Shown here: positions 4,416-51,062 of the stretch, piece after piece
How positions within the stretch are numbered: the first letter of the stretch is position 1
How the letters are laid out: every line of letters begins with the position of its first letter
IMG/VR virus record: IMGVR_UViG_3300025162_000016
Span: 186,001-250,000 of that record
Direction: 5' to 3' (one strand)
Length of the DNA: 64,000 nt
Translations under genes and position numbers: made by a program
Notes under the pieces: model-generated
Told to the model about the DNA's origin: nothing
Databases searched by the model: none
Seen by the model: only the letters and a program-made list of their open reading frames with translations

Positions 4416-4600
4416 TAAATAGTTTCAGTTATATCATGAACTACCCACCCGCTAAAGCAAGTGGGTTTCCCCGCTTGATTAGTTTCTGAGTTTCGTGGTT
4501 CACAGACTTGATTACTCTCTCTGTTTTACCAGATACCATCCTCGACGCCTCCCCACGTTTTTGTTTATCGTGCGATTTGATTCCCAAACCACACAAACCT
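4416..4600 (-). ncRNA. predicted TnpB omegaRNA (scaffold to 4436, then guide GATATAACTGAAACTATTTA)
   Basis: Known TnpB architecture: RNA overlaps the gene 3' end and right end; 5' boundary approximate. Confidence 0.6.
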
Positions 4601-5799
4601 TGTTTTAATATATTCAGGGACGCATTATAGTCCCTATCGTGATGAATGTTACAAATAGGACAATCCCATTCTCTATCACCCTTCTTTAATGATTGGTTTA
4701 TGTATCCACAATCATTACAGGTTTTAGAAGATGGAAACCATCTATCCACTTGGATGAACTTCCTATCGTTCCATTCACTCTTATATTTGAGTTGTCTAAC
4801 AATCTCATACCAAGATACTTCTTGTATTGACCTTGCTCTCCTATGGTCTTTCATCATATTGATTATACTTAAATCTTCCATACAGATTATTGCGTTGTTT
4901 TTGACAATATCATTAGTAAGTTTATGAGTATAATCCATTTTTACATTAGTTATCTTTTCGTATGTTTTTGCTAACTTAACTCTTGCTCGTTCTCTATTCT
5001 CACCTTTCTTTGTTTTCTTGGAATGCTGTCTTTGTTGGTATTCCAGTTTCTTTCGATATTTCTTTGCTATTCTTGGATTGGAAATCTTTTTACCATCGGA
5101 GAAAGTCATCAGGTCAATCAATCCTAAATCAATACCTACACTTTTATTTGTCTCCTTGACTTTAAGTGTGAAATCTTCCTCAACAATGAATGATACAAAA
5201 TACTTGTTAGTTTTGGTTTTGGAAATGGTGAGGAAACAAATCTCATAGTTTTCTCCAAATGGTCTATGTTGGTTTACCTTAATTGCTTTCAATTTAGGAA
5301 TAGTCAATAGTCCATTCTCAAAAGTAAAATGTTGAGGAATACAGAATGATTGTTTATCGTATTTGGATTTGAAAGATGGGAAGGACGCAATCTTTTTGAA
5401 GAACCTTTGGTATGCTACATCAAGTTGTCGTAATGATTGTTGGAGAGATTGACTATTGACTTCGTTCAACCATTCAGTATCTTTATCCTCTTTCAATGCC
5501 ACAAGAAGTTTAGCCGTATCGTTGTATCCTATTCCTTTTCCATTTTTGAGGTAATGGTCTTTTCGGGCATTAAGAAAGTAATTAAAGACGAAACGGGAAC
5601 AGCCAAAGGATTTAGCAAAGAAGGTCTTTTGTTCTTCGGTTGGAAGAACTGGAAACTTATATCCTCTGGTTATTCTTTTTGTTGTCATCAAGTATAAGTA
5701 TATCGAAGATTTACAAAAAGTTATTTTATTTGTAAATATCTTCATTTTCAATGGGTCGCATTCATCCCATCCCCTAAAGGAGATGGGTTTTATGCTCCC
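4436..5799 (-). mobile_element. non-autonomous IS200/IS605 (IS1341-like) element, TnpB only
   Basis: Subterminal hairpins CCCATCTCCTTTAGGGGATGGG (left end) and CCCACTTGCTTTAGCGGGTGGG-TAGTTCAT (right end); left boundary uncertain by 1-2 nt. Confidence 0.85.
4441..5688 (-). CDS. tnpB: TnpB RNA-guided endonuclease
   Basis: RuvC D/E/D (GIDLG, MEDL, DRDYNA), CNDC/CPIC zinc ribbon; start re-placed at MTTKR. Confidence 0.95.
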   Translation of the reverse strand: MTTKRITRGYKFPVLPTEEQKTFFAKSFGCSRFVFNYFLNARKDHYLKNGKGIGYNDTAKLLVALKEDKDTEWLNEVNSQSLQQSLRQLDVAYQRFFKKIASFPSFKSKYDKQSFCIPQHFTFENGLLTIPKLKAIKVNQHRPFGENYEICFLTISKTKTNKYFVSFIVEEDFTLKVKETNKSVGIDLGLIDLMTFSDGKKISNPRIAKKYRKKLEYQQRQHSKKTKKGENRERARVKLAKTYEKITNVKMDYTHKLTNDIVKNNAIICMEDLSIINMMKDHRRARSIQEVSWYEIVRQLKYKSEWNDRKFIQVDRWFPSSKTCNDCGYINQSLKKGDREWDCPICNIHHDRDYNASLNILKQGLCGLGIKSHDKQKRGEASRMVSGKTERVIKSVNHETQKLIKRGNPLALAGG

Positions 5800-6595
5800 T
5801 CAAAGATAAAATGCCATGGCTAAGGAGTTGTTTTCTACTATCATTCGAAACCTTCTAAATATCCGGAAATCATTTTCGGGCATGAAGAAGTTATGTTTTA
5901 ACATTATATCGATAAACCATACATTTCCTTTAGCATTTACATGTTGAGGTTGGGCTTCATTCACACTGAAAGTGCTATCGTGAATGAGTAGATTTGTACG
6001 TCCTGTCAGATTTTTTACCGTAGCATTTAAATCCGGAATATGTTCAAAACAATCCATCGCAAGAATGGCGTCGTAATGAGTTGCCGGTCCTTTTAAAAAA
6101 TCATCTACATCGATCATTTGGATTCCGGCAATTCCAAATTTTTTCATTAAAAATTCACAGAACTTATATTGATGACTAGTTTTAAAATCACAATATAGAA
6201 TATGTAGGTCTGGAAATTTCTCTTTAAGAAGAAAGCTCGTAATACCCAGTCCTCCCCCCATAATCCACCAGCGAAGTTATTTTGTAATTTTCTATTGCAT
6301 TATAAATGAAACCTAGTTTATCTGTAAACATTGAACAAGCATTCCATGGTAATAAATCAAAGATGTAAAAATCGGTTTCTTTATACCAATTTTCAATAGT
6401 TATATTATCGTGATTTTTTAATTTATTCCATTCTTCCGATAGTTTCTCAACCCCTTTCCGGACGTTGAGATTTCCCATCTTGTTGAATTGATAAAGCAAT
6501 GTTTTTACATCATCTTTAGAGTATTTCTCTTTGAAATATTCATGAACAAGATCGACGCAGGTATTTTCATTTGAAATAGTGTCAAGGATAGTCAT
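5800..6595 (-). pseudogene. class I SAM methyltransferase frameshifted in a G6 tract
   Basis: ORFs 6224-6595 and 5800-6261 join as VDYGGGLGITS if one G is removed at 6254-6259; later AMDCFEHIPD motif. Confidence 0.8.
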
Positions 6596-11208: not shown

Positions 11209-11209
11209 G

Positions 11210-12184
11210 TTAATATGTTTGATTTTGATAAAGAGTAAGGAATTCCGTAATTTTTTCAATTGATAATCCATGTGCATCTAACATTTCATCTCTCGTGCCA
11301 TTTCCTAAAATATAGCCTTCTTCTAGACCAAAGCGTTTGAGTTTACATTGAAGATTTTTATCGGCAATGGTGTCTGCAATAACGGAGGAAAATCCTCCCC
11401 CGTTTAATGTTTGCTCTTCTAATGTTACAACCAACTCAGCGTGTTTTAAATAGTTATCTAGTACAACCGGAATGGGTTTGATTTGAAATACATCAAATAC
11501 GTTACAATCGATTGTTTTAGTAATTTTAAGTGCTCGACTTAATAGATATCCTGAAGTAACCAAACAAATTTTTGTGCGGCATCCTTCGTCTTTCAATGGA
11601 AACACTCCTTGATTGTTTTCCATATCAAATCCATTATACTGTGTTTCGGTGGTGGCATCATATGTTTTTTCATAAAACACATCCAAAGCGGTATCGTATG
11701 CTCGTTCAAGTCTTATATAAATCAATTTTCGGTTTTTATACGTATATTTTACCAATTGTTTGACTGCGGGATTGGTTGCGGGAGAATAAATTTCTATTCC
11801 GCATATGCTTCGCATATACGCCATATCATCTGTCGGATTGTGGGCGGCACCCGCTGGTGCATATCCTAGTCCGACTCCCACTCCTAGAATGGTAATAGGG
11901 TTTTGAGCAATTGCACATGAATATCTAATCTGCTCGAAGCATCGAGCCGACCAGCATGCCATATAATAAACATATACCTTTTTCCCACGGCTAGAGAACC
12001 CTGCCGCTACATTGATGGAGTTCTGTTCTGAAATGCCGGTTGCGAAAAATTGATTTGGAACTTCTTCTCTCCATTTGTCTAACGCCGGTGCTCCCATATC
12101 CGGAGAAATTAGAATTACATCTTTATCCTTTTTAGCTAGAGTTAGAAGCTCCATTAAAAATAAATCTCGTTGGGTAACACTCAT
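11210..12184 (-). CDS. transketolase C-terminal (pyrimidine-binding) subunit
   Basis: GISEQN, EQIR, YIRLER, TLEEQ; ATGA overlap with upstream gene. Confidence 0.9.
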   Translation of the reverse strand: MSVTQRDLFLMELLTLAKKDKDVILISPDMGAPALDKWREEVPNQFFATGISEQNSINVAAGFSSRGKKVYVYYMACWSARCFEQIRYSCAIAQNPITILGVGVGLGYAPAGAAHNPTDDMAYMRSICGIEIYSPATNPAVKQLVKYTYKNRKLIYIRLERAYDTALDVFYEKTYDATTETQYNGFDMENNQGVFPLKDEGCRTKICLVTSGYLLSRALKITKTIDCNVFDVFQIKPIPVVLDNYLKHAELVVTLEEQTLNGGGFSSVIADTIADKNLQCKLKRFGLEEGYILGNGTRDEMLDAHGLSIEKITEFLTLYQNQTY

Positions 12185-24886: not shown

Positions 24887-25573
24887 TTATTTTGTTTTTT
24901 GCCCGAACACGGTATGTCCACGATTTTCATCAATCGTAAACCATTCATTATATCGAATATTTGTTTTTAATTGAGTTGCCATGGTTTTTTCGTGATATAA
25001 TGCCAAATTAAAATCAAATGGCAATGTGGTAAAGGAAGCGTGCCCTTCTATTTTCTCATGCAGTCGTCGTTCCCAATGAATTCGAGATGGATCGTTTTTA
25101 TAAATGCGTCCTTGAAAATCAGGAGCATTTACTATGGGTCTGTTATCACATTCTGGACATGGAGTAAGTCTCCACCCCCATGTTTTAGCATCTTGAATTG
25201 TTACTCCAATATAATCATTAATTCGGCTAACAAAAATCAATTCAATTGTTGGATTTAACTCAATAATGGATTTGATATTAATAATTAGATTTGGATTTGG
25301 TATCTCATCCCCGTCAATTTGAAATATCCATGGATTTTTACATTGCTCGTTTCCAAAATTTTTATGTTGGGAATAATTACGATCAAGTTTGTGCGGAATT
25401 AATTGTATAGAATCTTTCCATTTATTGAAAATTTCTATTGTATTCGGATTATCAGAGAAATCATCTAATATAATAACTTCATCTTCTATATCTTTATGAG
25501 CAATAACATTGGTTAAACACTTATCTAAAGTATCACTTTCATTGTGTGATGTTATTAAATAACTTATTTTCAT
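24887..25573 (-). CDS. GT2 glycosyltransferase (KdtX/LgtF-like)
   Basis: ISYLITSHNE, DDFSD, QIDGDE, PDFQGR, LHE. Confidence 0.88.
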   Translation of the reverse strand: MKISYLITSHNESDTLDKCLTNVIAHKDIEDEVIILDDFSDNPNTIEIFNKWKDSIQLIPHKLDRNYSQHKNFGNEQCKNPWIFQIDGDEIPNPNLIINIKSIIELNPTIELIFVSRINDYIGVTIQDAKTWGWRLTPCPECDNRPIVNAPDFQGRIYKNDPSRIHWERRLHEKIEGHASFTTLPFDFNLALYHEKTMATQLKTNIRYNEWFTIDENRGHTVFGQKTK

Positions 25574-28148
25574 AATTTTTATTTTCACTTATCGGCATTT
25601 TCGCAATTTCCGCTTGAGTTGGAGGATTTATTGGTGTAGACGCAGTTGGTAATTTTGGGAGATTTAGTTTTTTTAATTTTGGAAGTATAATTTGTTGCGG
25701 TAATACGAATTTAGGAACATATTTTTCCAAAAGCGAGTGAAATGCTTTATCCATTGCCTCAATTGAGAATTTCTCGGCATTTTCAGCACGAAGTAATTCC
25801 GCATTAGGTAATAGCGTATCGTAATTATTAAAAGCTTGTCGCATTTGTTCGGCGGCTTTACCATAATCGACTGTAAACCATTGCGATTCAGCTACAAACC
25901 ATTCATTTACTGCTTCGCCGGAAATCTGTTCTAGTTTACCTTCAAAGAAATTTGCATATTTCGGATTCATGAAATCCAGATGACCACTCCATTTTGGTGC
26001 AATCAATGGTTTTCCGCTTAATGTTGATAATAACATGGGATGACAATTGTGTACTACAAAATTTTCCGTACAGTAACTTTCATCTTCTTCGACTGATAAA
26101 TTATATACCATTCCTTCATATGGTAAGGACTCGATGGTTTTTAGTTTAAATACATGATATGCTACATTATCATATGAAACGGAAAATGATTTGGGAAGTC
26201 CTCCACGGGACAAATATTTATCATTTTGGTATTGAATATTACAAAAACTGTGATTTTTATTTAAAATATCAATAAGTGCGGTATTAGACTTATAATTTGA
26301 AGTTCGAATACGACTAACCGGTGCATTAAATTTATTGTTATCTTTTACATCATGACAAGAGTGTATATTTAATTTTAATAAACACTCTCGTACATCTCTA
26401 ATTAAACTGTCATTTACTAATTGAAGAGATATGTTTTTATTATTTTTTAAACTACCATCTCCCATGAAAATTGATGATATTAAATTTTCAACAAATATTT
26501 TTGATGAATTTTTTAATATCATGGGAATTCTTTTATAAATTGCCCCTGATCCAAATAAAGCCGTTAAGAATTCTCCGATAATTGCGGAATAAAAAATCAG
26601 CTTTAATGAATTTTTAGTTTTGTGAGGTTCGAGGGAGTAAGAATCAATTTCAAAGACAGTTTTGAAACATTCTATTAATTCTTTTGCTATTGTAAGTTCC
26701 TCGTTTTTATTTAAAGAAAATATGATTGCTCCGTTGGAAACGCATCCCTCGGATAGAAAATAACCACATATTTTTGCAAATTCTGGAGATAAAACAATAT
26801 TATTTTTTATTTTCTTTATAGTAGTTTCATTTGAATGAATATAGGTTAAGTTTTCGTCTCGCAATTCAATGTTTGGACACTGTATAAATTCAGATATGTT
26901 TATGGCCGGAGGTGTGGTCCAAGTGTGTTCTTCGGGCAATGCAAGATAATCCGATAGTTTTAATTCCTCTGTTGAAATCCATTGTAAAACATTATTTCTA
27001 TATACATAACATCTATGGTTGGGGGTAAATTGATATGAAATAGAATTGATTCCATTGTAAACCGATATTTTTTTCATTTCTCCACTATAATGTCTAGATA
27101 ATGATGCGGTTACTTTTTTCCATTGTCCCGTATGTGTAAGCACCATATCTTTATTAGTGACATTTTTTATATTTTTTAATCCGGTTTTGGTAACAATTGG
27201 AGTATCTTCTAAAGTACAATAACCCTCTCCATGAGTAAATGAAACGTGAACCTTCACTTTTTTATGATTATAAAGTGAATTCATTTCGATATCACTTAAT
27301 TCGCCATGTAGAAGATAGATGTTTGGCCAGTTGGTAATAGTAGAATTTTCTTTTTTTACCATATCTGTCACTTCTTTTATTTTAGTCAAACACTCATATC
27401 TATCTATGTTAGATAAAGTCGCTCCACTGGTTTTAAGAATAAGTGCAGGGGGATTTTTTACTCCTTTGAATGTCTCAAGGAAAGTTTTCATTAACCATCC
27501 GATAGATTTTCTATCTGAATTCATTGAACCACCCGTCCATTGACCCACGAACAGAAATGCGAAGTTTTCAGTAATCCCAGACATGGCAGTTTCCAATGAA
27601 TCAATCACCGCATTCGTTTTATGATATAAATTGGTGTTCGCTCCCCAAAATAAAACTTCAATGGGGGTCTTTACGATCAATGGTTCAGTTACACCGGTAG
27701 GAAGTTTTTTAGAATATTGTGCTCCTGCGAATACATCTTTACCATGTTGTGACATGACAATATTTAAATCCATTCGGTTAAGACCTTCTAACCATTCTGG
27801 TTTAGGAATGGTAGTTTCAATGGCGGCGGTAATTCCAATATTGTATTTACCAATTTTCATGATTCCTTGCGGAGTCTGTAAAAATTCATTGGGAATAGAT
27901 ACTTGAATAAATAATTCCGGCTGTCGAGTTAATGGTCCTTGAAGTAGTCTACTAAGAAGTTCTTTAGTTAACGGATCCTTGCCTTCCATTTCTAAGTTTC
28001 TCTGTGGGCATTGTCCCCAACGTGTAGGAACAACTCGAACGTCGTATTTATCGTATTTTAATAGACTTTTAGCTAATGCTAACGCCCAATCTCCATACCC
28101 ACTTCTCGTCATTAATGGCGAGGTAATTACACAAACAGGTTTATTCAT
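25539..28148 (-). CDS. GT4-like glycosyltransferase with intein
   Basis: SGYG, FLFVGQW..RKS, HGEGY|CHP. Confidence 0.88.
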   Translation of the reverse strand: MNKPVCVITSPLMTRSGYGDWALALAKSLLKYDKYDVRVVPTRWGQCPQRNLEMEGKDPLTKELLSRLLQGPLTRQPELFIQVSIPNEFLQTPQGIMKIGKYNIGITAAIETTIPKPEWLEGLNRMDLNIVMSQHGKDVFAGAQYSKKLPTGVTEPLIVKTPIEVLFWGANTNLYHKTNAVIDSLETAMSGITENFAFLFVGQWTGGSMNSDRKSIGWLMKTFLETFKGVKNPPALILKTSGATLSNIDRYECLTKIKEVTDMVKKENSTITNWPNIYLLHGELSDIEMNSLYNHKKVKVHVSFTHGEGYCTLEDTPIVTKTGLKNIKNVTNKDMVLTHTGQWKKVTASLSRHYSGEMKKISVYNGINSISYQFTPNHRCYVYRNNVLQWISTEELKLSDYLALPEEHTWTTPPAINISEFIQCPNIELRDENLTYIHSNETTIKKIKNNIVLSPEFAKICGYFLSEGCVSNGAIIFSLNKNEELTIAKELIECFKTVFEIDSYSLEPHKTKNSLKLIFYSAIIGEFLTALFGSGAIYKRIPMILKNSSKIFVENLISSIFMGDGSLKNNKNISLQLVNDSLIRDVRECLLKLNIHSCHDVKDNNKFNAPVSRIRTSNYKSNTALIDILNKNHSFCNIQYQNDKYLSRGGLPKSFSVSYDNVAYHVFKLKTIESLPYEGMVYNLSVEEDESYCTENFVVHNCHPMLLSTLSGKPLIAPKWSGHLDFMNPKYANFFEGKLEQISGEAVNEWFVAESQWFTVDYGKAAEQMRQAFNNYDTLLPNAELLRAENAEKFSIEAMDKAFHSLLEKYVPKFVLPQQIILPKLKKLNLPKLPTASTPINPPTQAEIAKMPISENKNYENKLFNNITQ
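26046..27218 (-). mobile_element. intein with LAGLIDADG homing endonuclease (391 aa)
   Basis: CTLEDT start, FTPNH, GYFLSEG and IFMGDGS motifs, VVHN|C end. Confidence 0.92.
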
Positions 28149-36887: not shown

Positions 36888-38120
36888 ATGCCTAAATTTC
36901 TAAAAGGATATAAAATTGAATTGGCCCCAAATAAGTGTCAGATGACATTGTTTAGAAAGCATTTTGGAGCCAGCAGATTCGCATTTAATTGGGCGTTACA
37001 AAAGAAAAAAGAAGCATTTGATAGGAAAGAAAAGATTCCGAACAATATTGAATTGCATAGAGAGTTGAATAAACTTAAGGGAACGGATGCCTTACCTTGG
37101 GCTTACGATGTTAGTAAAGTCGCATTTCAGTCGGGTTTAATTAACTGTGATAGAGCATTTCAGAATTTCTTTAATCGTTGTAAGAAAAAAGTCAAAGGGA
37201 AGAAGGGATTCCCAAAATTTAAGTCAAAGAAGAATGAGACACAATCATTCAAATTAGATGGTTCGATATACTTGACAGATAAATCTCACATTAAATTACC
37301 TCGTATTGGTAAAGTCAAGTTAAAAGAATTGGATTACATTCCAATCGATACTGAAATCAAATCAGTAACAATTAGTCGTAAAAGCAGTAAATGGTTCGTA
37401 TCTTGTTTGGTAGAATCTGATATTAAGATGCTCCCACAGACAGATAAGAAAGTTGGAATTGATTTAGGAATTAAGACCTTAGCAACCTGTTCTAATGGGA
37501 CTAAATATGAGAATCCCAACGCATTAAAATTCAATTTACGAAAATTAAAGAGAAAACAACGTCAGTTAAGTAGAAAAAAGAAAGGAAGTCAAAATTATAA
37601 AAAATCAAAGTTAAAACTTTCTAAGTTACATAATAGAATTTCTAACATAAGGAAAGATTCGTCGCACAAAGCGACTTCAAAAATAATTAACGAAAACCAA
37701 GTAATTGTTATTGAAGGATTGAAGATTTCCAATATGTTAAAAAATCACTGTCTTGCTCAGGCAATTAGTGATATGTCTGCCCATGAATTTCGCAGACAGT
37801 TAGAATATAAGGCAAAATGGTATGGTCGTGAAATCATTATTGCCGATACTTACTTTCCATCTAGCAAGACTTGTTCGTGTTGTGGATGGAAGAATGATAA
37901 TCTCACATTGAAAGATAGAATTTTCAAATGTGAGATTTGTAAGAATGAGATGGATAGAGACTTGAATGCCTCTAAAAATCTTGAGAAACTTTCTACCGTC
38001 AGTTCGACGGGAATTTACGCCTTGGGAGATGGGAGTTCGGTTTGTCCAGCAATGGATAAATCTAGCCCGTCGTTGAAAAAGGAATCTAACGGAAAATTTA
38101 CATACACCCTAAAAAGATGA
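36888..38120 (+). CDS. tnpB: TnpB RNA-guided endonuclease (IS607-type)
   Basis: GIDLG, IEGL, DRDLNA; CSCC/CEIC zinc ribbon. Confidence 0.95.
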   Translation: MPKFLKGYKIELAPNKCQMTLFRKHFGASRFAFNWALQKKKEAFDRKEKIPNNIELHRELNKLKGTDALPWAYDVSKVAFQSGLINCDRAFQNFFNRCKKKVKGKKGFPKFKSKKNETQSFKLDGSIYLTDKSHIKLPRIGKVKLKELDYIPIDTEIKSVTISRKSSKWFVSCLVESDIKMLPQTDKKVGIDLGIKTLATCSNGTKYENPNALKFNLRKLKRKQRQLSRKKKGSQNYKKSKLKLSKLHNRISNIRKDSSHKATSKIINENQVIVIEGLKISNMLKNHCLAQAISDMSAHEFRRQLEYKAKWYGREIIIADTYFPSSKTCSCCGWKNDNLTLKDRIFKCEICKNEMDRDLNASKNLEKLSTVSSTGIYALGDGSSVCPAMDKSSPSLKKESNGKFTYTLKR

Positions 38121-38744: not shown

Positions 38745-41396
38745 GTGTACGTTAATATTTGGGTAGACAGAAGAAACGAAATTGTCCATGTATGGGACGA
38801 CGAGAAGGGATGCGTTAATTTTCCGCTTGAAGCGATCCGATTTGCTTATAAAAAGAATCCAGCCGGTGAATATGTTTCTTTATACGGAGATCGTCTCGAA
38901 GAGGTTATGTATTATGATGATAATGATCATTCTCTCCTCGAATCAGATGTTCCAATAGAATTAAAAACTTTAAGTAAATTGTATGAGGATAGTGATGAAG
39001 TTTCAGAGACTACTGCTATTGGGGTAATTGATATTGAAGTTGATTCTACCGGAGGATTTCCGAATATTGAAACGGGAGACAAGGCCATTACTGCGATTGC
39101 GTTGTACGACACGTCTACTGAGACATTTTGGTCATTTGTGCTTGATCCCGATAAAAAAATTGTTTCTCGCACTGAGCGCACCAAACTAAATTCATCTGAT
39201 ACTAAAGATTATGAATGGAATATTAACTCTTATAAATACGAAGACGTTTTATTAAGAGCATTTTTGAGTAAATGGGAAGAATGTAATTTTAGCATTGTCT
39301 CTGGATGGAACTGTAATGGGTTTGATTTGCCCTATATTTATAATCGAATTCGTGCTGTGTTAGGTAAGAAGGCGGGGTATCGACTATCGACAATTGGAAT
39401 GTGTTATTTACACAAATTTTCCAAAACAATGCGAATTGCGGGAATGTCTTGTCTTGATTACCTTGATCTTTATAAAAAGTTTATTGGTAAAGATCAGCCA
39501 ACATTTGCATTAAATTATATTGGACAGGAAGAAGTAGGAATTGGAAAAATACCATATCGTGGCAGTTTAGTTACTTTGTATAAAGAGGATTTGGATCGAT
39601 ATGTTGAATATAATTTAAATGACGTTAAAATTGTAGTAGCATTGGAGAAAAAATTAGATTTCATTTATCTTGCACGGTCGGTATGTCACAAAGGACATGT
39701 TCCTTATGAATGGTATATATATTCTTCTCGTTGGATTGACGGGGCGTTATTAACTTATTTACATCGTAAAAAATTAATAGCTCCTAATAAACCAGTTGGA
39801 GGGAAAGAAGAATATGAAGCGATGAAAGAGGAAGGTGCAGAAGGGTTTGAAGGCGCATATGTAAAAGATCCGGTGCCGGGGCTCTATGATTGGGTGTATT
39901 CCGCAGATGTCACTTCTTTGTATCCCAGCACTATTATGTCCCTAAATATTTCTAGTGAGACTAAATTTGGGAAGATAGAAAATTGGGATACGGAAAAATT
40001 CGTTAATGGAAAAATAGGGGCGGTATCTATAGGAGAAACGCATTATACTGAAGAAGAATTTAAAGAATTAATTAAAGATGGAAAATATAGTATAAGTTCT
40101 AACGGCATTCTTTATTCTCAGGATATTATGGGAATTGTTCCTTCCATTCTTAATATATGGTTTTCGGAGCGTGTGGAATTTAAAGCACTGGCGGAAAAAT
40201 ACAAAAACGAAGGTGATAAAGTCAAAGAACTATTTTATGATAGACGACAAAAGCGGCAAAAAATCTTCATGAATAGCGTCTACGGCACACTAGGACTTCC
40301 GATCTTCCGATTCTATGATAAGGATAATGCCGAGGCAACCACGGTCTCCGGGCAGCATGTTATCAAGATGACCGAACGGTTTGTTAATATGAAATATGCC
40401 GATAAATTTGCTGATAAAGGCGAGATAACTAACGATGATTTTGTCATATATATTGATACCGATAGCGTTTACATGTCAGCTAAACCCTTGCTTAATTTAG
40501 ATAAAAAATCTACGGAAGTAACTGATGATACTATTCAGTATGTTATTGATTTGTCCGTGGAAATGTCTAAAGGAATTAACGAATTTTATGAGTTTGCAAT
40601 TCCTGCCATGTTCAACTTGAATAAACATCGAATAAAAATCACGCCGGATGTTATTACTACAACTACATTGTGGATCAAGAAAAAACGATATGCCATGATG
40701 AAAGTGTATGATATGGAAAAACAACGTAAAGTATTAGATAAAGACGGGACTTTAGGGAAATTGGAAGTTAAAGGTATTGATGTAGTGAGAACTTCATTTC
40801 CGGCTCGATTTCGTAAATTTTCAGGAGAACTTTTGAACATGATCCTGCGTAAGGTTTCAAAAAACACGATTGATGATAGAATTCTTGTAATGGAACGAGA
40901 AATTAAAACATTGCCGGTGGATGAAATTGCAAAAAACACTTCTGTAAATTTTATTAGTCGTAAAGGAGATGCAAATTACAATCCTCCGGATAGAAAGATG
41001 TTTACTGTTCCTACCTCTAAAACTCCTCCTCAAGTAGGAGCCGCTATGATGTATAATGACATGTTAAAGAAATTCGGTTTACAAAAACAATATGAGCCAA
41101 TTCATAACGGTCAAAAAATTAAATGGGTGTATTTGAAGGAGAATCCACATGCTTTAGATTATTTGGCTATTAAAGCAGATGGGACTGATCCTGATGAAAT
41201 CCTAGAAATTATTAATACTTATGTAGATCGTAAACAGATGTATGAACGAGAATTGAAAACAAAAATTGCCAAGTTCTATGCGGTGTTGAAATGGATATAT
41301 CCCTCATTTACTGCTAGACTTGCAGATTCTTTTTTCAAATCAAAAACGGTTTCCGTTCCAGTCGTTCCTAAATTGGATGACGAGGAAGAAGAATAA
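38745..41396 (+). CDS. polB: family B DNA polymerase (T4 gp43-like)
   Basis: DIE, GWN...FD, YN..D exonuclease motifs; DVTSLYPS, K...NSVYG, YIDTDS. Confidence 0.97.
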   Translation: MYVNIWVDRRNEIVHVWDDEKGCVNFPLEAIRFAYKKNPAGEYVSLYGDRLEEVMYYDDNDHSLLESDVPIELKTLSKLYEDSDEVSETTAIGVIDIEVDSTGGFPNIETGDKAITAIALYDTSTETFWSFVLDPDKKIVSRTERTKLNSSDTKDYEWNINSYKYEDVLLRAFLSKWEECNFSIVSGWNCNGFDLPYIYNRIRAVLGKKAGYRLSTIGMCYLHKFSKTMRIAGMSCLDYLDLYKKFIGKDQPTFALNYIGQEEVGIGKIPYRGSLVTLYKEDLDRYVEYNLNDVKIVVALEKKLDFIYLARSVCHKGHVPYEWYIYSSRWIDGALLTYLHRKKLIAPNKPVGGKEEYEAMKEEGAEGFEGAYVKDPVPGLYDWVYSADVTSLYPSTIMSLNISSETKFGKIENWDTEKFVNGKIGAVSIGETHYTEEEFKELIKDGKYSISSNGILYSQDIMGIVPSILNIWFSERVEFKALAEKYKNEGDKVKELFYDRRQKRQKIFMNSVYGTLGLPIFRFYDKDNAEATTVSGQHVIKMTERFVNMKYADKFADKGEITNDDFVIYIDTDSVYMSAKPLLNLDKKSTEVTDDTIQYVIDLSVEMSKGINEFYEFAIPAMFNLNKHRIKITPDVITTTTLWIKKKRYAMMKVYDMEKQRKVLDKDGTLGKLEVKGIDVVRTSFPARFRKFSGELLNMILRKVSKNTIDDRILVMEREIKTLPVDEIAKNTSVNFISRKGDANYNPPDRKMFTVPTSKTPPQVGAAMMYNDMLKKFGLQKQYEPIHNGQKIKWVYLKENPHALDYLAIKADGTDPDEILEIINTYVDRKQMYERELKTKIAKFYAVLKWIYPSFTARLADSFFKSKTVSVPVVPKLDDEEEE

Positions 41397-44654: not shown

Positions 44655-45803
44655 ATGGACGATAATTTTAAATTGGCGGATATAAAAATACGAGATCCTC
44701 TTAGAGAACGAGGGGTATTATATGTTGGTCAATATGGAACTAGTGGATATGCTACTGCGGCAAAAGGGTATATATGTGACTTTTTGATGCGGGGTATTCC
44801 AATTAGTTGGAATCCATTGAAACTTGATGATTCGGAATTATCCGATGATAATTTTTATAACATATTGGCTAAGACTGTTATAGGCAAGGCAATTTCAGAT
44901 GTACGTACTATTATTTTGCATTGCACTGCGGATTTGTGGCCAACTTACAAATCTGAAAATGCCGATAAATTTCTCAATAGAAATATTATAGGATATACCG
45001 TATGGGAGACAAATGTCTTGCCGAGATATTGGCCAAAATTTATTAACGAATCGGTGAATGAAGTGTGGTGTCCTTCTCATTATAATTACGAAACTTTTGT
45101 TAATTCTGGGGTAACCATTCCGATTAGAGTAGTTCCTCATATATTTTTAAAAATTGATCTTCCAAAACGGGAGCAGGTTTTATTAACGGATTGTGTGGGA
45201 AATTCGATTGTAGATGATCCCCATGTAGTTACTTTTTATAACAATTCGATTGTAGATGATCCTCATGCATTTACTTTTTATAATATAAGTGAATTAAATG
45301 AAAGAAAAAACGTTATAAGTTTGGTAGAGACGTTTTGTAAAGCATTTACTAAATCGGATTCAGTTAGATTGCTTCTTAAAGTTCATTATAAAAATTACAC
45401 GACGGAAAATTTAACTTATTGTATTAATAAGATTTTTGCGGTTCTTAAGGATTTCCCGAATCATGCCTCGGTGATATTGATAACTGGAAATTTAACCGAA
45501 CTTGAACTTCTTTCATTACATTCAATTGGAGATTGCTATGTATCTCTTACCAGATCAGAGGCATTTGGGTTAACTATTTTTGATGCTATGAATTATGGTA
45601 AGAAAGTTATAGTTACTGGATATGGCGGACAGGTTGATTATTTGGGAAATAACTATTCTGGTCTGGTGAGTTACAAATTGGTAGATGTTCAGAATATGGA
45701 TAGTTTTACTCATGGATATTATATGCAGGGTAAACAACAATGGGCAGCACCAAATATTGATCATGCAGTAGAGTTAATGCGAAAAGTTGTAAATATCATT
45801 TAA
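44655..45803 (+). CDS. GT4 glycosyltransferase
   Basis: SGYA, TVWET, RKN, RSEAFGL..FDAM. Confidence 0.9.
   Translation: MDDNFKLADIKIRDPLRERGVLYVGQYGTSGYATAAKGYICDFLMRGIPISWNPLKLDDSELSDDNFYNILAKTVIGKAISDVRTIILHCTADLWPTYKSENADKFLNRNIIGYTVWETNVLPRYWPKFINESVNEVWCPSHYNYETFVNSGVTIPIRVVPHIFLKIDLPKREQVLLTDCVGNSIVDDPHVVTFYNNSIVDDPHAFTFYNISELNERKNVISLVETFCKAFTKSDSVRLLLKVHYKNYTTENLTYCINKIFAVLKDFPNHASVILITGNLTELELLSLHSIGDCYVSLTRSEAFGLTIFDAMNYGKKVIVTGYGGQVDYLGNNYSGLVSYKLVDVQNMDSFTHGYYMQGKQQWAAPNIDHAVELMRKVVNII
45201..45284 (+). repeat. in-frame 42-bp tandem duplication
   Basis: NSIVDDPHVVTFYN / NSIVDDPHAFTFYN. Confidence 0.95.
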
Positions 45804-45814
45804 AAAAAATATAT

Positions 45815-46834
45815 ATGGATACTATTGTTGCTGTTACCGCACAAATTCCCTATCTGAATAAAGATGGAAAAATTGTGGCGTTCGGGGGAGGAGTTCCTAG
45901 AGCCATGATTAATCTGTTTAATTGCATATCAGATGTTTATAAGATTTACATTATGTATGTTCCTCAATATACTCCTAACAATGGAACAATGTTTCAATAC
46001 GAAAATATGACTTATATACCCGAAATTTCATTTTTTAAGTTTGAGGAAGTGTATGATAAATATTTTATTGGGATTGATTTCATTTTTATGATAGATATAT
46101 TTATACATGGGGAAAGTTCTTTTCAATGGAGATCATTGCCTCATAAAAAAATAGGAATGATTCAAACATGGAATACTGATCCTTTAGATATTGGAATGAA
46201 TGGAATAATTTGCAATGGGATCGAAGAGAGAATTAATATGTCTCCGCTATTATTTCCTGTTGGTTGTTTATATGATTCAAATGTGTTTTATCCCACAAAT
46301 CAGCCCAGAAAAAACTTTGCGTTGTATACTGGCCGATTGGATGTGGATAAAAACGTTCAATATTTGATTGATAATTGGAAAAAAATTTATGAGAAATTTG
46401 GAACTATATTGAAACTAATAGGTCCGTGTAATGTACAGAAAGTTAAAGTTCCTGAGTGTGATTATATAATCAATTTACCTCCGGTTGAAGATGCTATCCT
46501 CAGAGCGTATTATAATACATGTAAATGTTTTATAATGCCGTCAAAATGTGAAAGTTTTTGCTGTTCACTAGTTGAGGCGCTCGCCTGTAATGCTCCTTGT
46601 GTTGTTGATGGTGCAGTTGGATCAATAAAAAATTTCAATGGAATGGCAAAATATGTTTATGGCAATGGATATATTTGTCAAAATCTTTTATTACAAAATA
46701 TTGAAAACGTTTTATCGTCGTCTGTCGTTTCAGTAGAATCATCCGAGTTTGTAAAAAAACAATTTTCAATATCAGAAAATAAAATAGCTATCAAAAATTT
46801 TATAAAATTATGCCAGGATCCTCCGATATATTAA
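45815..46834 (+). CDS. GT4 glycosyltransferase
   Basis: GGGV, YTGRL..KN, PSKCESFCCSLVEALAC. Confidence 0.88.
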   Translation: MDTIVAVTAQIPYLNKDGKIVAFGGGVPRAMINLFNCISDVYKIYIMYVPQYTPNNGTMFQYENMTYIPEISFFKFEEVYDKYFIGIDFIFMIDIFIHGESSFQWRSLPHKKIGMIQTWNTDPLDIGMNGIICNGIEERINMSPLLFPVGCLYDSNVFYPTNQPRKNFALYTGRLDVDKNVQYLIDNWKKIYEKFGTILKLIGPCNVQKVKVPECDYIINLPPVEDAILRAYYNTCKCFIMPSKCESFCCSLVEALACNAPCVVDGAVGSIKNFNGMAKYVYGNGYICQNLLLQNIENVLSSSVVSVESSEFVKKQFSISENKIAIKNFIKLCQDPPIY

Positions 46835-47337
46835 ACGAAGATATTATCTCTATCGTAACAAGAATAAATCCATCCACTGTATTTGATGTAGGGGTGGGGG
46901 CGGGAAAATATGGGGAAATGTTAAAGAAAATATGTCCGTCAGTTTCTCTTACTGGGTGTGAAATAGATGCTTCATATTTAACAGAATTTAAAACACGACA
47001 TTCTTTTTATAAAAAGATTGTGGTTAAATCCATTATAGAAATAATAGATACAGAAGAGTTTGACGTTGATTTAGTTATTATGGGAGACGTACTTGAACAT
47101 TTAAAATACAGTCAAATTTTCGATGTGTTGGATTATTTTCAGTATCGAAGCAAATATATACTTTGTCTGTACCCAACTTGTCTTCGACAAGGAATATGGA
47201 ATGGACATTCATCTGAGCGTCATTTATCTGAAGTGAGGCTTAGAGATATCGTAGAAAGATATAATATATTGGAATATAAAAAGTTACAGGAGGTTGGATT
47301 CTCGATGAATTTATTATTAATACGGGCTTACTTATAA
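46810..47337 (+). CDS. class I SAM methyltransferase
   Basis: VFDVGVGAG, GDVLEHL. Confidence 0.88.
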   Translation: MPGSSDILNEDIISIVTRINPSTVFDVGVGAGKYGEMLKKICPSVSLTGCEIDASYLTEFKTRHSFYKKIVVKSIIEIIDTEEFDVDLVIMGDVLEHLKYSQIFDVLDYFQYRSKYILCLYPTCLRQGIWNGHSSERHLSEVRLRDIVERYNILEYKKLQEVGFSMNLLLIRAYL

Positions 47338-47338
47338 T

Positions 47339-48060
47339 ATGATTACTCGATTTACCATATATATGGAGAAAGATGTTCCGGAACAAACTTTCTTCGAAAA
47401 TTGATGTTTGATAATTTTGATTTAGTTCCGACGTATCTTCCGGACGGACATTTTGGATGGAAACATTTTTTTGGCTCTTTTGAAAATAGAAATGCTATTA
47501 GGAAATCAGAAGATTGTGCTATTTTATCTATAGTAAGAAATCCAATTGATTATTTAGTATCGTTTTATTATAATCCACATCATCAACCAAAAGAACGTTT
47601 GACAAATTTTATAACATTTTTATCCTCGCCGTTTTATTCTGTAGATGGTAATAATATAGACAGGAAAATTGATATAAATATAGAAAACGAAAGTCGTTAT
47701 CAAGACATTTTTGAAATGAGAAGTGTAAAAAGTAGATTTTTATATTCAACTATTCCCACGCTAACGAAAAATTGGTATTTTATGAAATATGAAGATTTAA
47801 AATCTGCTCCTGAAAATTTACTTGAAAATATAACTCGGAAATTTGAGTTAATTCCTAAAACACGCCGGTTTATGGTTGAGCAAAGAAGAGTGGGCCCTCC
47901 ATCTGAACGAAATGAGTTTGAATTTTCTAATGCTCCTTTAATGGAAAATTATTCCATTGATTCTTCTGACGCTAAAGAAATTATAAAAAATCGGTTAGAT
48001 TTTGAAATTGAAAAGTTAATAGGATATGATAAAAATACCATTATTATGCGACTTACATGA
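47339..48060 (+). pseudogene. sulfotransferase-like protein frameshifted at (AT)4
   Basis: Removing one AT at 47357-47364 gives MITRFTIYGERCSGTNFL (5'-PSB-like loop) in frame with VRNP.D.L.S and KYEDL. Confidence 0.72.
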
Positions 48061-48071
48061 TATTTATACGT

Positions 48072-48692
48072 ATGAAAGAAAAAAAGTCAACTAAAGAGAA
48101 TACGTATGACATGGGTATTGCAGGTAATACCGGGGCCATTGCAACTACCGCTGGATGGGGAACCTTTGCCTCTCCCAATGTAAGTCAGAATTCGGCTAAT
48201 TTTGTGAGTGGTAAAAATCAAGCAGACATTACCGCCACTAATACGGATGCATTAAACAATAAAATGATCGGGGCAAAAAGTAATACTCTAGCAGGAGCCC
48301 CTGCCTCTCCGAGTGCATTAGATGCGACTGTAAACCAAATTTATAGTAAAGAAATTACGCCTTCTGTTGATGAAGTCATGACCGGTCTCAAATATGAGAT
48401 GCAGAATATGATTAAAAAGGATAAGGCGAGAGCCAAAGATGTTGTGCTCGCAAATTTAAAACAAGATCCGCATTATTATGGAAAATTAGGAATGTGGAAT
48501 ATATCGGATAAAAATATGATGAATGTTCAACCCGCAAATCAAAGTAAAACCCCCGCTGAACTTCAAATGGAAGAGCGCATTAATGTGCTTAATCAGATGA
48601 TTAAAGCAAAGGGTAAAAGAACCGAAACCCCACAGTCTATTAAAGATGCCATTGCAGAGACAAAAGCAAAGAGAGATGCTCGATATTCCTAA
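48072..48692 (+). CDS. hypothetical protein with DUF5661-like segment
   Basis: GLKYEM...A...VL.NL..DPHYY; start 3 nt after TATTTATA. Confidence 0.6.
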   Translation: MKEKKSTKENTYDMGIAGNTGAIATTAGWGTFASPNVSQNSANFVSGKNQADITATNTDALNNKMIGAKSNTLAGAPASPSALDATVNQIYSKEITPSVDEVMTGLKYEMQNMIKKDKARAKDVVLANLKQDPHYYGKLGMWNISDKNMMNVQPANQSKTPAELQMEERINVLNQMIKAKGKRTETPQSIKDAIAETKAKRDARYS

Positions 48693-49825: not shown

Positions 49826-50466
49826 TACCGAAAACTATTCATCAAATTTGGATCGGGAATGATCCAATTCCAGATACATGCAACGCATTTATTGAACAGT
49901 GGAAAGCAATGTATTCGGATTACAATCATATTCTTTGGGACGATAGTAGGGTTAAAATTACAAATATTATTCCGGATGATAAACAAAAATATTTCACGTC
50001 GGCATATCCAATAGCATTGCGAGCTGATATTTTGAGATATGAGATTGTTCGTCGGTTTGGCGGGATTTATATTGATGTAGATACCGAACCGCTTAAACGG
50101 ATGGAAGATTATATGTTGAATTGTAGGTTTTTTGGTGGGAAACAATCAGAGCATCAAATCGCCATCGGTATTTTTGGTGCGGAACCACGAAATGAATTAA
50201 TAAATGACGTATGTGCTACCGTGGTCTCAAATATAGAAGATAAACTTGCATCTGGATGCGGGTTGGAATGGGTAGATCAATTGACGGGTCCGATGTATTT
50301 CACTCGTAGGTCTATTCCATATCGATCCGACCCTAGTTATTATTTTTATAATATGATTTATTTCTATCCTTATTCGTGGCTTGAACCGCATCGTCGTCAT
50401 GAGAATTTCAAAATAACGTCTCCGGATGCATATTCCGTTCATCATTGGCAAAAAAAATGGCTGTGA
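49822..50466 (+). CDS. GT32 (DxD) glycosyltransferase
   Basis: IPKTIHQIW, ADILRY, GGIYIDVD, TGP. Confidence 0.92.
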   Translation: MIPKTIHQIWIGNDPIPDTCNAFIEQWKAMYSDYNHILWDDSRVKITNIIPDDKQKYFTSAYPIALRADILRYEIVRRFGGIYIDVDTEPLKRMEDYMLNCRFFGGKQSEHQIAIGIFGAEPRNELINDVCATVVSNIEDKLASGCGLEWVDQLTGPMYFTRRSIPYRSDPSYYFYNMIYFYPYSWLEPHRRHENFKITSPDAYSVHHWQKKWL

Positions 50467-51062
50467 ATTATAATTTTATAGAAATCGGAACATCTGATTT
50501 TGATAGTTTAATTGAAACCGTGGATGATATCGCAACGGGTATAGTAGTAGAGCCGGTTAATTTTTATTTATATAAACTTCCGCATAAACCGAGAATACAC
50601 AAGTTGTGTGCGGCTATTGGAGAAAAGAACTCTCATGCGTTTATTCATTATTTAAATCCAAATATAATTGAGAAATATCAATTACCGGCATGGAGTAAAG
50701 GTTGTAATATGATTGGAAAAAATCATCCTACTGTTATAGATCTTCTTCTAAAAATGAATATTTCACCGGAAGAATATTTTTTAAAAGAGTCGGTTGCCAC
50801 CTATACTCTCAATACGGTTTTTGATATGTTTCAAGTCAATTCTGTAGAAGTTGTTAAAATAGATGCCGAAGGGGACGATTGTATGATTATGCGACAACTT
50901 CATAGTATAATTTGTCAAAATCGTATTTACAAACCTCGTAAAATTTATTTTGAAACAAATGAATTGGGGATAAAAAAGGATATTGAAGATATTAGAACGA
51001 TGTTCATGAATATTGGTTATAAAGTGACAGTTGGAAGTGAGGATAGTTACCTGTTCTATTGA
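50457..51062 (+). CDS. FkbM-family methyltransferase
   Basis: FIEIG, VEPV, KIDAEGDD. Confidence 0.85.
   Translation: MAVNYNFIEIGTSDFDSLIETVDDIATGIVVEPVNFYLYKLPHKPRIHKLCAAIGEKNSHAFIHYLNPNIIEKYQLPAWSKGCNMIGKNHPTVIDLLLKMNISPEEYFLKESVATYTLNTVFDMFQVNSVEVVKIDAEGDDCMIMRQLHSIICQNRIYKPRKIYFETNELGIKKDIEDIRTMFMNIGYKVTVGSEDSYLFY

What the first reader, a model, noticed from the sequence alone, without database searches (positions are those of the whole stretch)
47339..48060. Sulfotransferase-like gene switched off by one extra AT unit, a second slippage-type lesion in a glycan-decorating gene
Seen: ATG 47339 reads MITRFTIY then leaves frame at (AT)4; (AT)3 gives MITRFTIYGERCSGTNFL continuous with ORF 47401, which otherwise lacks its PAPS-binding loop. 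Together with the G6 lesion at 6254, both frameshifts noticed hit tailoring enzymes and none hit core genes. Inference: phase-variable methylation and sulfation of a phage glycan.
Basis: partly seen in the sequence, partly recalled or inferred. Interest (0 to 1): 0.6.

Follow-up and report, generated by a model that had tools for sequence, protein, structure and literature searches.

The report
Frameshifted sulfotransferase gene in jumbo phage
A sulfotransferase gene in a 369-kb T4-like lake phage is broken by a two-base AT duplication that is identical in every available assembly, so it looks like an ordinary dead gene in a strain-specific sugar-tailoring cassette rather than an on/off switch.

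Summary
ATG 47339 reads MITRFTIY, then an (AT)4 run (47357-47364) shifts the frame. The +2 frame continues with GERCSGTNFL and the rest of a 240-aa sulfotransferase. About 115 homologs are single ORFs starting M-x(3-4)-FTIYGERC, so the window carries a 2-bp AT duplication. The fold is that of a PAPS-dependent sulfotransferase (Z 13.3 to SULT1C3).

The phase-variation inference is not supported. All 24 contigs read (27 index blocks) carry (AT)4, and no intact allele exists among about 15 billion proteins. AT runs of 8 nt or more are no commoner in the genome than chance predicts. Reads could not be obtained.

The second lesion (G6, 6254-6259) is also real. Its intact G5 allele belongs to a different strain (99.8% identical), and G6 is always linked to an IS605/TnpB insertion in the same gene. 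That marks a lineage, not a switch.

New here: that other strain replaces window 45800-48057 (glycosyltransferase, methyltransferase and broken sulfotransferase) with a different cassette of methyltransferase, intact unrelated sulfotransferase and methyltransferase. Tailoring therefore varies between strains by cassette exchange and gene decay.

Best reading: a fixed loss-of-function allele, which can at most make a 218-aa protein lacking the PAPS loop. Recoding or rare reversion cannot be excluded.

The parts
47339..47404 (+). Remnant 5' end of the sulfotransferase gene. The native ATG (47339) gives 8 authentic codons (MITRFTIY), then 13 out-of-frame codons, ending at TGA 47402-47404, which overlaps ATG 47404 as TGATG.
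   Evidence: N-terminus matches homologs
47357..47364 (+). (AT)4 run, the site of the 2-bp (one AT unit) duplication that shifts the frame. Homologs imply (AT)3 or its coding equivalent (ATC TAT GGC in L006).
   Evidence: identical in all other assemblies
47365..48060 (+). Body of the sulfotransferase in the +2 frame, stop included. The 5'-phosphosulfate-binding loop GERCSGTN is at 47365-47388. The invariant K-H pair is at 47461-47466. The 3'-phosphate motif R..S (RNPIDYLVS) is at 47536-47562.
47404..48060 (+). Longest ATG-initiated ORF left (218 aa, P0003), and the product that gene callers report. It lacks strand beta1, the PAPS loop and most of helix alpha1.
46810..47337 (+). Upstream class I SAM methyltransferase (175 aa). 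It lies in the same frame as the sulfotransferase body, separated by its TAA stop (47335-47337). It is part of the same strain-specific cassette.
45800..48057 (+). Strain-specific tailoring cassette B: GT4-type glycosyltransferase (339 aa), methyltransferase (175 aa) and the frameshifted sulfotransferase. In the sister strain an unrelated 2,021-bp cassette takes its place (L026:8146-10166).
6254..6259 (-). G6 tract (G5 in the sister strain) that splits a methyltransferase of about 271 aa within SAM motif I (LVDYGG|GLG). The gene spans 5800-6595 on the minus strand.
4438..5805 (-). IS605-family TnpB element (1,368 bp) inserted in the last codons of the same methyltransferase, replacing ..AFYDITETIYD with ..AFYL. 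It is absent from the sister strain.

Best explanation
The locus is a PAPS-dependent sulfotransferase gene in a glycan-tailoring cassette of a 368,758-bp T4-like jumbo phage from lake metagenomes. Duplication of one AT unit at codons 7-9 (ATATAT to ATATATAT) has frameshifted it. Ribosomes starting at the native ATG 47339 stop after 21 codons, at a TGA that overlaps ATG 47404. The most that can be made by ordinary decoding is therefore a 218-aa protein without strand beta1, the 5'-phosphosulfate-binding loop (GERCSGTN) and most of helix alpha1, which should not bind PAPS. The allele is fixed in every assembly that carries this cassette, so it is a stable loss-of-function allele (a young pseudogene) and not a switch. 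It sits in an accessory cassette that a co-circulating sister strain has replaced with a different one. The same strain has also lost a second tailoring methyltransferase, through a G-tract frameshift plus an IS insertion. Together these point to relaxed selection and turnover of decorating steps in this lineage. Shown here: the frameshift, the family and fold, invariance across assemblies, the cassette swap, and the linkage of G6 with the IS. Inferred: loss of activity, absence of recoding, and relaxed selection.
For: The homolog N-termini and 20 invariant residues, all retained in the window, come. The family is supported and the fold. (AT)4 is present in all 24 contigs read (27 index blocks) that carry the 218-aa product, and in all 24 contigs read that carry the neighbouring 175-aa gene. 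All fetched DNA is 99.97-100% identical to the window. No intact allele is recorded: the 90% cluster has a single member, and the next relative is 62% identical. AT runs of 8 nt or more number 34 against about 41 expected. There is only one PF00685 match in the genome, so no paralog can compensate. The RNA downstream of the tract is no more stable than shuffled sequence, z = -0.30. The DNA polymerase gene carries ATA TAT AT in the same codon phase at window 40446-40453. The second lesion is tied to a haplotype and to an IS insertion. The sister strain carries a different cassette with an intact, unrelated sulfotransferase.
Against: Apart from the 2-bp insertion the ORF is undamaged: 232 sense codons remain open in a 33-36% GC genome, and every family-invariant residue is present. 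This is also what a still-used, recoded or reversible gene would look like. It fits a young lesion equally well, because the strains differ by only about 0.2%, so less than one further mutation is expected in the gene. Assemblies show only majority alleles, and minority (AT)3 molecules could not be looked for. An ATT codon at 47350 in the +2 frame would give a product that keeps beta1 and the PAPS loop; the AF2 model folds the +2-frame residues IYHIY as strand beta1 at pLDDT about 92. A +2 slip of tRNAs on AUA UAU AU would re-pair perfectly, as the sequence shows directly.
Confidence: 0.7

Rival explanations
1. Phase variation. Slipped-strand mispairing at (AT)4, and at G6 in the methyltransferase, switches sulfation and methylation of a phage glycan on and off at high frequency within the population.
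For: Both lesions lie in short repeats and both hit tailoring enzymes. The sulfotransferase ORF is otherwise intact. G5 and G6 alleles both exist in nature. Hypermutable polyG tracts are reported for Campylobacter phages; that literature surfaced, and the primary paper was not read here.
Against: Only (AT)4 is seen in 24-27 contigs from several samples, and no ON allele exists in the protein collection. Four dinucleotide units and six Gs are below the tract lengths of known contingency loci (own knowledge). AT runs are at chance frequency. G6 is always linked to an IS insertion and to a SNP haplotype, with no recombinant G6/no-IS or G5/IS form among about 80 contigs.
Confidence: 0.08
2. Translational recoding or a non-canonical start. 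A functional enzyme is still made, either by a +2 (equivalent to -1) ribosomal slip on AUA UAU AU, or by initiation or re-initiation at ATT 47350 in the +2 frame after termination at the upstream TAA.
For: The P- and A-site tRNAs on AUA-UAU can re-pair exactly 2 nt downstream, as the sequence shows. ATT 47350 lies 12 nt after the upstream stop, and a start there would give M-YHIY-GERCSGTN, comparable in length to the short natural N-termini MKFTIYGERQ and MKITIFGERC. The AF2 model keeps beta1 with these residues. This genome does not use Shine-Dalgarno sites, so start choice is not SD-guided.
Against: No homolog is frameshifted, so the arrangement is not conserved. There is no significant downstream structure. 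The same octamer in the same phase sits in the essential DNA polymerase gene. The strong ATG at 47339, in the genome's preferred A/T-rich context with T at -1, competes 11 nt upstream. ATT starts and +2 slips are rare and inefficient (own knowledge).
Confidence: 0.1
3. Sequencing or assembly artefact. The real genome has (AT)3 and an intact gene.
For: The record is a metagenome-assembled genome, and indels at repeats are a known class of error.
Against: Independent assemblies from JGI, ENA and Logan (different samples and assemblers) all give (AT)4. One of them differs by a nearby SNP. Two-base insertions at a 6-nt repeat are not a typical short-read error (own knowledge).
Confidence: 0.02
4. 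Neofunctionalised truncation. The 218-aa product from ATG 47404, made by termination-reinitiation at TGATG, is the functional form, for example a non-catalytic glycan- or partner-binding subunit.
For: The TGA of the 21-codon leader overlaps ATG 47404, a classic coupling arrangement. The allele is fixed.
Against: The TGATG arises from codons K-L-M-F that are conserved in intact homologs too, so it is coincidental. Removing beta1, the P-loop and alpha1 takes out the core of the fold. No natural family member among the 27 aligned homologs starts there.
Confidence: 0.05

Closest known systems
PAPS-dependent sulfotransferases (Pfam PF00685 Sulfotransfer_1; e.g. human SULT1C3 2H8K, SULT1A1, glycopeptide sulfotransferases Teg12/Teg14, TPST)
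   Same: Same alpha/beta fold: Z 13.3, rmsd 2.9 A over 182 residues to 2H8K, and all 50 top matches are sulfotransferases. It has a P-loop-like 5'-PSB motif (..SGT..), a 3'-phosphate motif RNPxDxxxS that aligns to SULT7A1 IVRNPKDTAVS, and an invariant K-H pair where SULTs have their catalytic Lys/His.
   Different: It is only 12-19% identical and much smaller (240 aa). The PSB loop is GERCSGTN, not PKSGTTW. It belongs to an uncharacterised, mostly metagenomic and viral clade with unknown acceptor. In this genome the gene is out of frame.
Simple-sequence-repeat contingency loci (LOS/capsule glycosyltransferase genes of Neisseria, Haemophilus and Campylobacter; polyG tracts in Campylobacter phages)
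   Same: Frameshifts at short repeats near the 5' end of glycan-modifying genes.
   Different: Known loci use long tracts (own knowledge: typically 7-8 or more G/C, or 6 or more di- or tetranucleotide units) and show length heterogeneity within and between isolates. Here the tracts are (AT)4 and G6. (AT)4 is invariant across assemblies, and G5/G6 tracks a strain haplotype.
Programmed ribosomal frameshifting in phages (tail-assembly chaperone G/GT, dnaX-type -1 sites)
   Same: Two overlapping frames joined at a repetitive heptamer- or octamer-like site where tRNAs could re-pair.
   Different: The frameshift is not conserved among homologs. There is no X XXY YYZ site, no stimulatory structure and no 0-frame product of evident use. 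The shift needed is +2/-1 on an AU repeat, for which I know no natural precedent.
Allelic cassette polymorphism at glycan loci (bacterial O-antigen and capsule loci; hypervariable islands of T4-like phages)
   Same: Two unrelated gene sets occupy the same site between conserved flanks that are 99.5-99.7% identical. Both encode tailoring enzymes (methyltransferases, sulfotransferases, a glycosyltransferase).
   Different: The locus lies in a 369-kb phage genome. The target glycan (virion, host envelope or DNA) is unknown. One of the two cassettes carries a dead sulfotransferase.

Membership tests
PAPS-dependent sulfotransferase (PF00685 clan) | Profile match above the curated threshold | tested here: met
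   PF00685 scores 24.2 bits against a cut-off of 22, E 2.6e-5, over residues 57-166 of P0001. It is the only such match in the genome.
PAPS-dependent sulfotransferase (PF00685 clan) | Sulfotransferase alpha/beta fold | tested here: met
   AF2 model with pLDDT 94.4 and pTM 0.90. Foldseek top hits are all sulfotransferases at probability 1.00. VIA-align gives Z 13.3, rmsd 2.9 A, 182 residues aligned to 2H8K.
PAPS-dependent sulfotransferase (PF00685 clan) | 5'-phosphosulfate-binding loop after strand beta1 | tested here: met
   GERCSGTN is encoded at 47365-47388. G10, E11, R12, G15, T16 and N17 are invariant in 28 sequences. The loop is present in the DNA but not joined to any canonical start codon.
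PAPS-dependent sulfotransferase (PF00685 clan) | 3'-phosphate-binding motif (R ... S) | tested here: met
   R67 and S75 are invariant. The profile aligns ivRnPidylvS to IVRNPKDTAVS of SULT7A1, 5X2B.
PAPS-dependent sulfotransferase (PF00685 clan) | Catalytic base His | tested here: inconclusive
   K42-H43 are invariant and lie about 24 residues before the R..S motif, as in SULTs (own knowledge). No residue-level structural superposition was made.
PAPS-dependent sulfotransferase (PF00685 clan) | One open reading frame from start codon through the catalytic core (a functional gene) | tested here: not met
   Frame 0 stops after 21 codons. The +2 frame has no ATG, GTG or TTG before codon 22.
SSR contingency (phase-variable) locus | Repeat tract long enough to be hypermutable and over-represented | tested here: not met
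   The tract has 4 units (8 nt). The genome has 34 runs of 8 nt or more against about 41 expected from dinucleotide content, and 17 lie harmlessly inside ORFs.
SSR contingency (phase-variable) locus | Tract-length polymorphism among sequences of the same population, with both ON and OFF alleles | tested here: not met
   All fetched contigs have (AT)4. All 24 contigs read next to the 175-aa gene have the 218-aa call. The 90% cluster has one member and there is no 240-aa allele.
SSR contingency (phase-variable) locus | Within-sample minority alleles in reads | not testable with these tools
SSR contingency (phase-variable) locus | Switching independent of genetic background (for the G5/G6 tract) | tested here: not met
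   G6 occurs only with the IS insertion and haplotype-B SNPs, and G5 only without them. No mixed forms appear among 11 cluster members on about 80 contigs.
Programmed ribosomal frameshift | Frameshift conserved in homologs | tested here: not met
   All 27 aligned homologs, and those fetched as DNA, are single ORFs.
Programmed ribosomal frameshift | Downstream stimulatory RNA structure | tested here: not met
   MFE is -11.2 kcal/mol against a shuffle mean of -10.4, z -0.30.
Programmed ribosomal frameshift | Slippery site allowing tRNA re-pairing | tested here: inconclusive
   There is no -1 re-pairing. A +2 shift of AUA-UAU re-pairs exactly, as the sequence shows, but the same octamer in the same phase occurs in the DNA polymerase gene.

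The most novel reading that the evidence does not exclude
The frameshift is not a dead end. On AUA UAU AU the two tRNAs slip forward by 2 nt with perfect re-pairing, or ribosomes terminating at the upstream TAA re-initiate at ATT 47350. Either route would make a small, tunable amount of active sulfotransferase, so that only a fraction of the phage's glycan is sulfated. A natural +2 recoding site in a phage would be new.
Probability: 0.05. Interest if true: 0.7.

Novelty: new member of a known kind. Interest (0 to 1): 0.25.

Why it matters
As posed, the finding would have been a first example of repeat-driven phase variation of glycan sulfation in a phage. The evidence points instead to an ordinary fixed frameshift, which matters mainly for annotation: the 218-aa call should be flagged as a pseudogene or truncated product. 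The context is more useful. A complete 369-kb T4-like lake phage carries a very large sugar-biosynthesis and tailoring island. Two co-circulating strains, 99.8% identical, differ there by a clean swap of a three-gene tailoring cassette and by lineage-specific loss of a methyltransferase and a sulfotransferase, on top of different loads of IS605/TnpB elements and inteins. This gives a concrete system for asking what jumbo-phage glycans are for and how fast their decoration turns over.

Tried and rejected
2. Known phages. tblastn of P0001 against 50,697 phage records gave no match, and PHROGs gave no family.
3. Other alleles. IMG/VR and JGI metagenome scans for near relatives or other repeat lengths returned only the window's own record and one 102,940-bp contig, both (AT)4.
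4. Same-contig proof. I could not show what the sister strain carries 41 kb from its intact methyltransferase via the genome search, because that record is not held. Neighbour-gene clusters resolved it instead: scaffold_15 (179,171 bp) carries both the intact G5 methyltransferase and cassette A.
5. Stop-codon readthrough. Reading through the TAA at 47335 would fuse the 175-aa methyltransferase in frame to the sulfotransferase body. I rejected this. TAA is the commonest stop in the genome (154 of 285 long ORFs). Relatives encode the sulfotransferase as a separate gene whose start overlaps the end of the gene upstream, which is a methyltransferase in P0007's contig. Nothing in the genome suggests another genetic code, and none was used.
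6. Transcriptional slippage. Rejected on general knowledge, since it needs long homopolymers.
7. Relaxed-selection test. Not attempted. The nearest relative is 62% identical and the strains are about 0.2% apart, so the test would have no power.
8. The large representative-protein search and complex prediction were not needed.
9. Literature. No paper on jumbo-phage sulfotransferases was found.

Full report
**What is in the sequence**

On the + strand, ATG 47339-47341 follows the TAA stop (47335-47337) of a 175-aa SAM methyltransferase gene by one base. It reads MITRFTIY, then runs through an alternating AT stretch of 8 nt (47357-47364). It continues out of frame to TGA 47402-47404, giving 21 codons in all. 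The +2 frame is open from that same TAA to the stop at 48058-48060. It reads ..IYGERCSGTNFLRKLMF.. and then 215 further residues (P0001). The first canonical start in that frame is TTG 47401 / ATG 47404, which lies downstream of the GERCSGTN loop.

**Is it a frameshift relative to the family?**

A word search found 115 relatives. The 27 I aligned are single ORFs, mostly 240-245 aa. Their N-termini read M-x(3-4)-FTIYGERC[ST]GTNF; P0007 starts MITKFTIYGERC and P0021 MITHFTVYGERC.

- The frame-0 peptide MITRFTIY is therefore the authentic N-terminus.
- The +2 frame is authentic from G10 onward.
- Deleting one AT unit restores exact colinearity.
- A single-base deletion would need an extra residue between Y and GER, which no homolog has.
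- A relative's DNA reads ACT ATC TAT GGC GAA at this point (L006).

The lesion is thus a 2-bp tandem duplication, ATATAT to ATATATAT.

**What the gene is**

- Pfam Sulfotransfer_1 passes its gathering threshold (24.2 against 22 bits).
- A family profile hits mouse SULT7A1 at the 3'-phosphate motif, ivRnPidylvS against IVRNPKDTAVS.
- An AlphaFold2 model built on the family alignment is confident (pLDDT 94.4, pTM 0.90).
- Its best structural matches are all PAPS-dependent sulfotransferases. SULT1C3 gives Z 13.3, rmsd 2.9 A over 182 residues. Teg12/14 and TPST are also among the top 50.
- In the model, beta1 is residues 5-10, the loop GERCSGTN follows, and alpha1 is residues 13-26.

The 218-aa product from ATG 47404 (P0003, the product gene callers report) lacks all three elements. 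It should not bind PAPS; this is inference from the role of the 5'-PSB loop in this family. There is only one PF00685 match in the whole genome.

**The genome**

The window is bases 186,001-250,000 of a 368,758-bp virus record with direct terminal repeats, Ga0209083_1000006.

- It encodes a T4-type Gp23 major capsid protein (E 5e-58) and a T4-like family B DNA polymerase (phrog_262, E 1.6e-167).
- It shows tightly packed, overlapping genes and standard stop codon use.
- It has no Shine-Dalgarno signal. Leaders are A-rich, with T at -1 in 58% of long ORFs.

It is a T4-like jumbo phage. The leader pattern hints at a host with SD-independent initiation, such as Bacteroidota; that is my inference and was not tested.

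The window is dominated by sugar-nucleotide and glycan genes. These include:

- DegT aminotransferase
- NAD-dependent epimerase/dehydratase
- dTDP-sugar isomerase
- split transketolase
- B12-radical SAM enzyme
- glycosyltransferases (GT1, GT2, GT25 and DXD sugar-binding types)
- several methyltransferases

These assignments come, and from the gene tables. The sulfotransferase's closest relatives sit in syntenic glycan clusters of related phage contigs. In each it is an intact gene overlapping the stop of the gene upstream, followed by a homolog (36% identity) of the window's 211-aa downstream gene.

**Artefact?**

No. The exact 218-aa product is indexed in 27 blocks of the contig collection. 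All 24 contigs read have the same gene layout. The fetched DNA comes from JGI, ENA and Logan assemblies of different samples: L002-L005, L008, L015, L016, L018, L020-L023. It is 99.97-100% identical to the window and always has (AT)4. One contig carries a SNP 39 nt upstream.

**Phase variation?**

The evidence is against it at every level I could reach.

1. No other tract length appears in any assembly. This includes a pattern search allowing 0-10 nt between the flanks. It also includes all 24 contigs read that carry the neighbouring 175-aa gene.
2. No intact 240-aa allele exists in the protein collection. The 90% cluster has one member and the next relative is 62% identical.
3. The tract is short and unremarkable. 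The genome has 34 alternating AT runs of 8 nt or more, against about 41 expected from its dinucleotide content. Seventeen of them lie inside ORFs without harm.

This remains the main gap.

**The second lesion**

On the minus strand, a gene starting at ATG 6595 (overlapping the upstream stop as ATGA) reads MTILDT...LVDYGG. It then leaves frame at G6 (6254-6259). The rest, GLGITSF..., continues in the ORF 5800-6261. Homologs are 272-275 aa. The two halves match P0120 at 74% (residues 1-117) and 72% (residues 113-265). The lesion is therefore real and splits SAM motif I.

Here both alleles exist. The 90% cluster holds these members:

| Allele | Product | Contigs |
|---|---|---|
| Intact | 271 aa | 13 |
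| Intact | 279 aa | 33 |
| Broken, C-terminal half | 153 aa | 33 |
| Broken, N-terminal half | 131 aa | 30 |
| Broken, N-terminal half | 123 aa | 3 |

The intact allele has G5 and ends ..AFYDITETIYD. The broken allele has G6 and ends ..AFYL, because a 1,368-bp IS605-family TnpB element (window 4438-5805) is inserted in its last codons.

No G6-without-IS or G5-with-IS form is on record. The G5 contigs also differ from the window by about 2 SNPs per kb, and they lack a 927-bp HNH intein in the radical SAM gene. G5 and G6 therefore mark two strain haplotypes, A (intact) and B (the window). The gene has been hit twice in B. That is the signature of decay in a lineage, not of a reversible switch.

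**The unexpected part**

Neighbour-gene clusters showed haplotype-A variants for the flanking genes but none for the three genes from 45815 to 48060. Fetching haplotype A explained why (L026, from the same 179,171-bp scaffold that carries the intact methyltransferase).

- Between flanks that are 99.5-99.7% identical, window 45800-48057 is replaced by an unrelated 2,021-bp cassette.
- Cassette B (window) holds a GT of 339 aa, a methyltransferase of 175 aa and the frameshifted sulfotransferase.
- Cassette A holds a 202-aa methyltransferase, an intact 229-aa sulfotransferase of another subfamily, and a 226-aa methyltransferase. The cassette-A sulfotransferase has the P-loop HLSKTAGTS. It scores 25.1 bits on PF03567 and is only marginally similar to P0001 (E 0.012).
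- Cassette A is on about 43 or more contigs and cassette B on about 21-26.

Strain-level variation in methylation and sulfation of whatever this island builds is therefore real. It is achieved by cassette exchange plus gene loss.

**Could the gene still work?**

Two routes cannot be excluded.

- ATT 47350 in the +2 frame would give M-YHIY-GERCSGTN. That N-terminus is as short as some natural ones, and AF2 still folds it as beta1.
- tRNAs on AUA-UAU could re-pair exactly 2 nt downstream.

Several points count against both routes:

- The arrangement is not conserved in any homolog.
- The RNA downstream is no more structured than shuffled sequence, z -0.30.
- The same octamer in the same codon phase lies in the DNA polymerase gene at 40446-40453.
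- The native ATG has the genome's preferred context.

The gene's otherwise perfect state does not discriminate between these readings. At about 0.2% strain divergence, less than one further mutation is expected in it. Readthrough of the upstream TAA, which would fuse the methyltransferase in frame, was considered and rejected; see the list of things tried. No alternative genetic code was invoked.

**Verdict**

The family assignment and the slippage-type origin of both lesions are supported. The phase-variation mechanism is not supported.

The most likely reading (about 0.7) is a fixed loss-of-function frameshift in a strain-specific accessory cassette. This is a new, broken member of a known enzyme family, and of low intrinsic interest. 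The cassette polymorphism and the mobile-element differences between two nearly identical jumbo-phage strains are the more informative by-product.

Noticed in passing
window 45800-48057 vs L026:8146-10166: Two co-circulating strains (flanks 99.5-99.7% identical) carry unrelated three-gene tailoring cassettes at the same site. The window has GT + MT + broken sulfotransferase. The other strain has MT + an intact Sulfotransfer_2-like protein (229 aa) + MT.
   Followed up: yes
window 6254-6259 (minus strand), gene 5800-6595: A G6 tract splits a ~271-aa SAM methyltransferase at motif I. The sister strain has G5 and an intact gene on 13+33 contigs. G6 is always linked to the IS insertion described in the next item.
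   Followed up: yes
window 4438-5805: A 1,368-bp IS605-family TnpB element (436-aa ORF 4441-5751, minus strand) is inserted in the last codons of the methyltransferase and is absent from the sister strain. A second TnpB ORF lies at 36888-38120. The sister strain has its own TnpB element between the GT25 and GT32 genes (L026:11937-13415, at window ~49826).
   Followed up: partly
window 9571-10497 (within ORF 8749-11277, minus strand): A 927-bp HNH-type intein (Intein_splicing, PT-HINT and HNH hits) interrupts a B12-binding radical SAM gene in the window. The sister strain's gene is 510 aa without it. Another intein, with a LAGLIDADG domain, lies in ORF 25539-28148.
   Followed up: partly
window ~40462-40469 (DNA polymerase gene 38745-41396) vs L026:1183-2793: The sister strain has a 1.6-kb insertion in its polB (weak Intein_splicing hit, gene calls split in three). 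The window's polB is uninterrupted. Each strain carries a different set of selfish elements.
   Followed up: no
L003:6279-6367 (joins at window 50681, inside the FkbM methyltransferase gene 50445-51062): One ENA scaffold with (AT)4 diverges from the window inside the FkbM-family methyltransferase gene. Its last 89 nt match nothing in the genome, and may be another insertion, a variant or a chimeric scaffold end. Two other assemblies break at 48228/48248.
   Followed up: no
whole genome (G000), upstream of 285 long ORFs: There is no Shine-Dalgarno signal (AGGAG in 0.7% of leaders). Leaders are A-rich from -2 to -10, with T at -1 in 58%. This suggests a host with SD-independent initiation, Bacteroidota-like.
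   Followed up: partly
G000:C1:91495-93003 (L024), outside the window: The T4-type Gp23 capsid match comes in two pieces (profile 2-74 and 126-367) in a 583-aa frame, with one TAA reported inside the second match. This may simply be the gene's end, or an insertion in the capsid gene.
   Followed up: no
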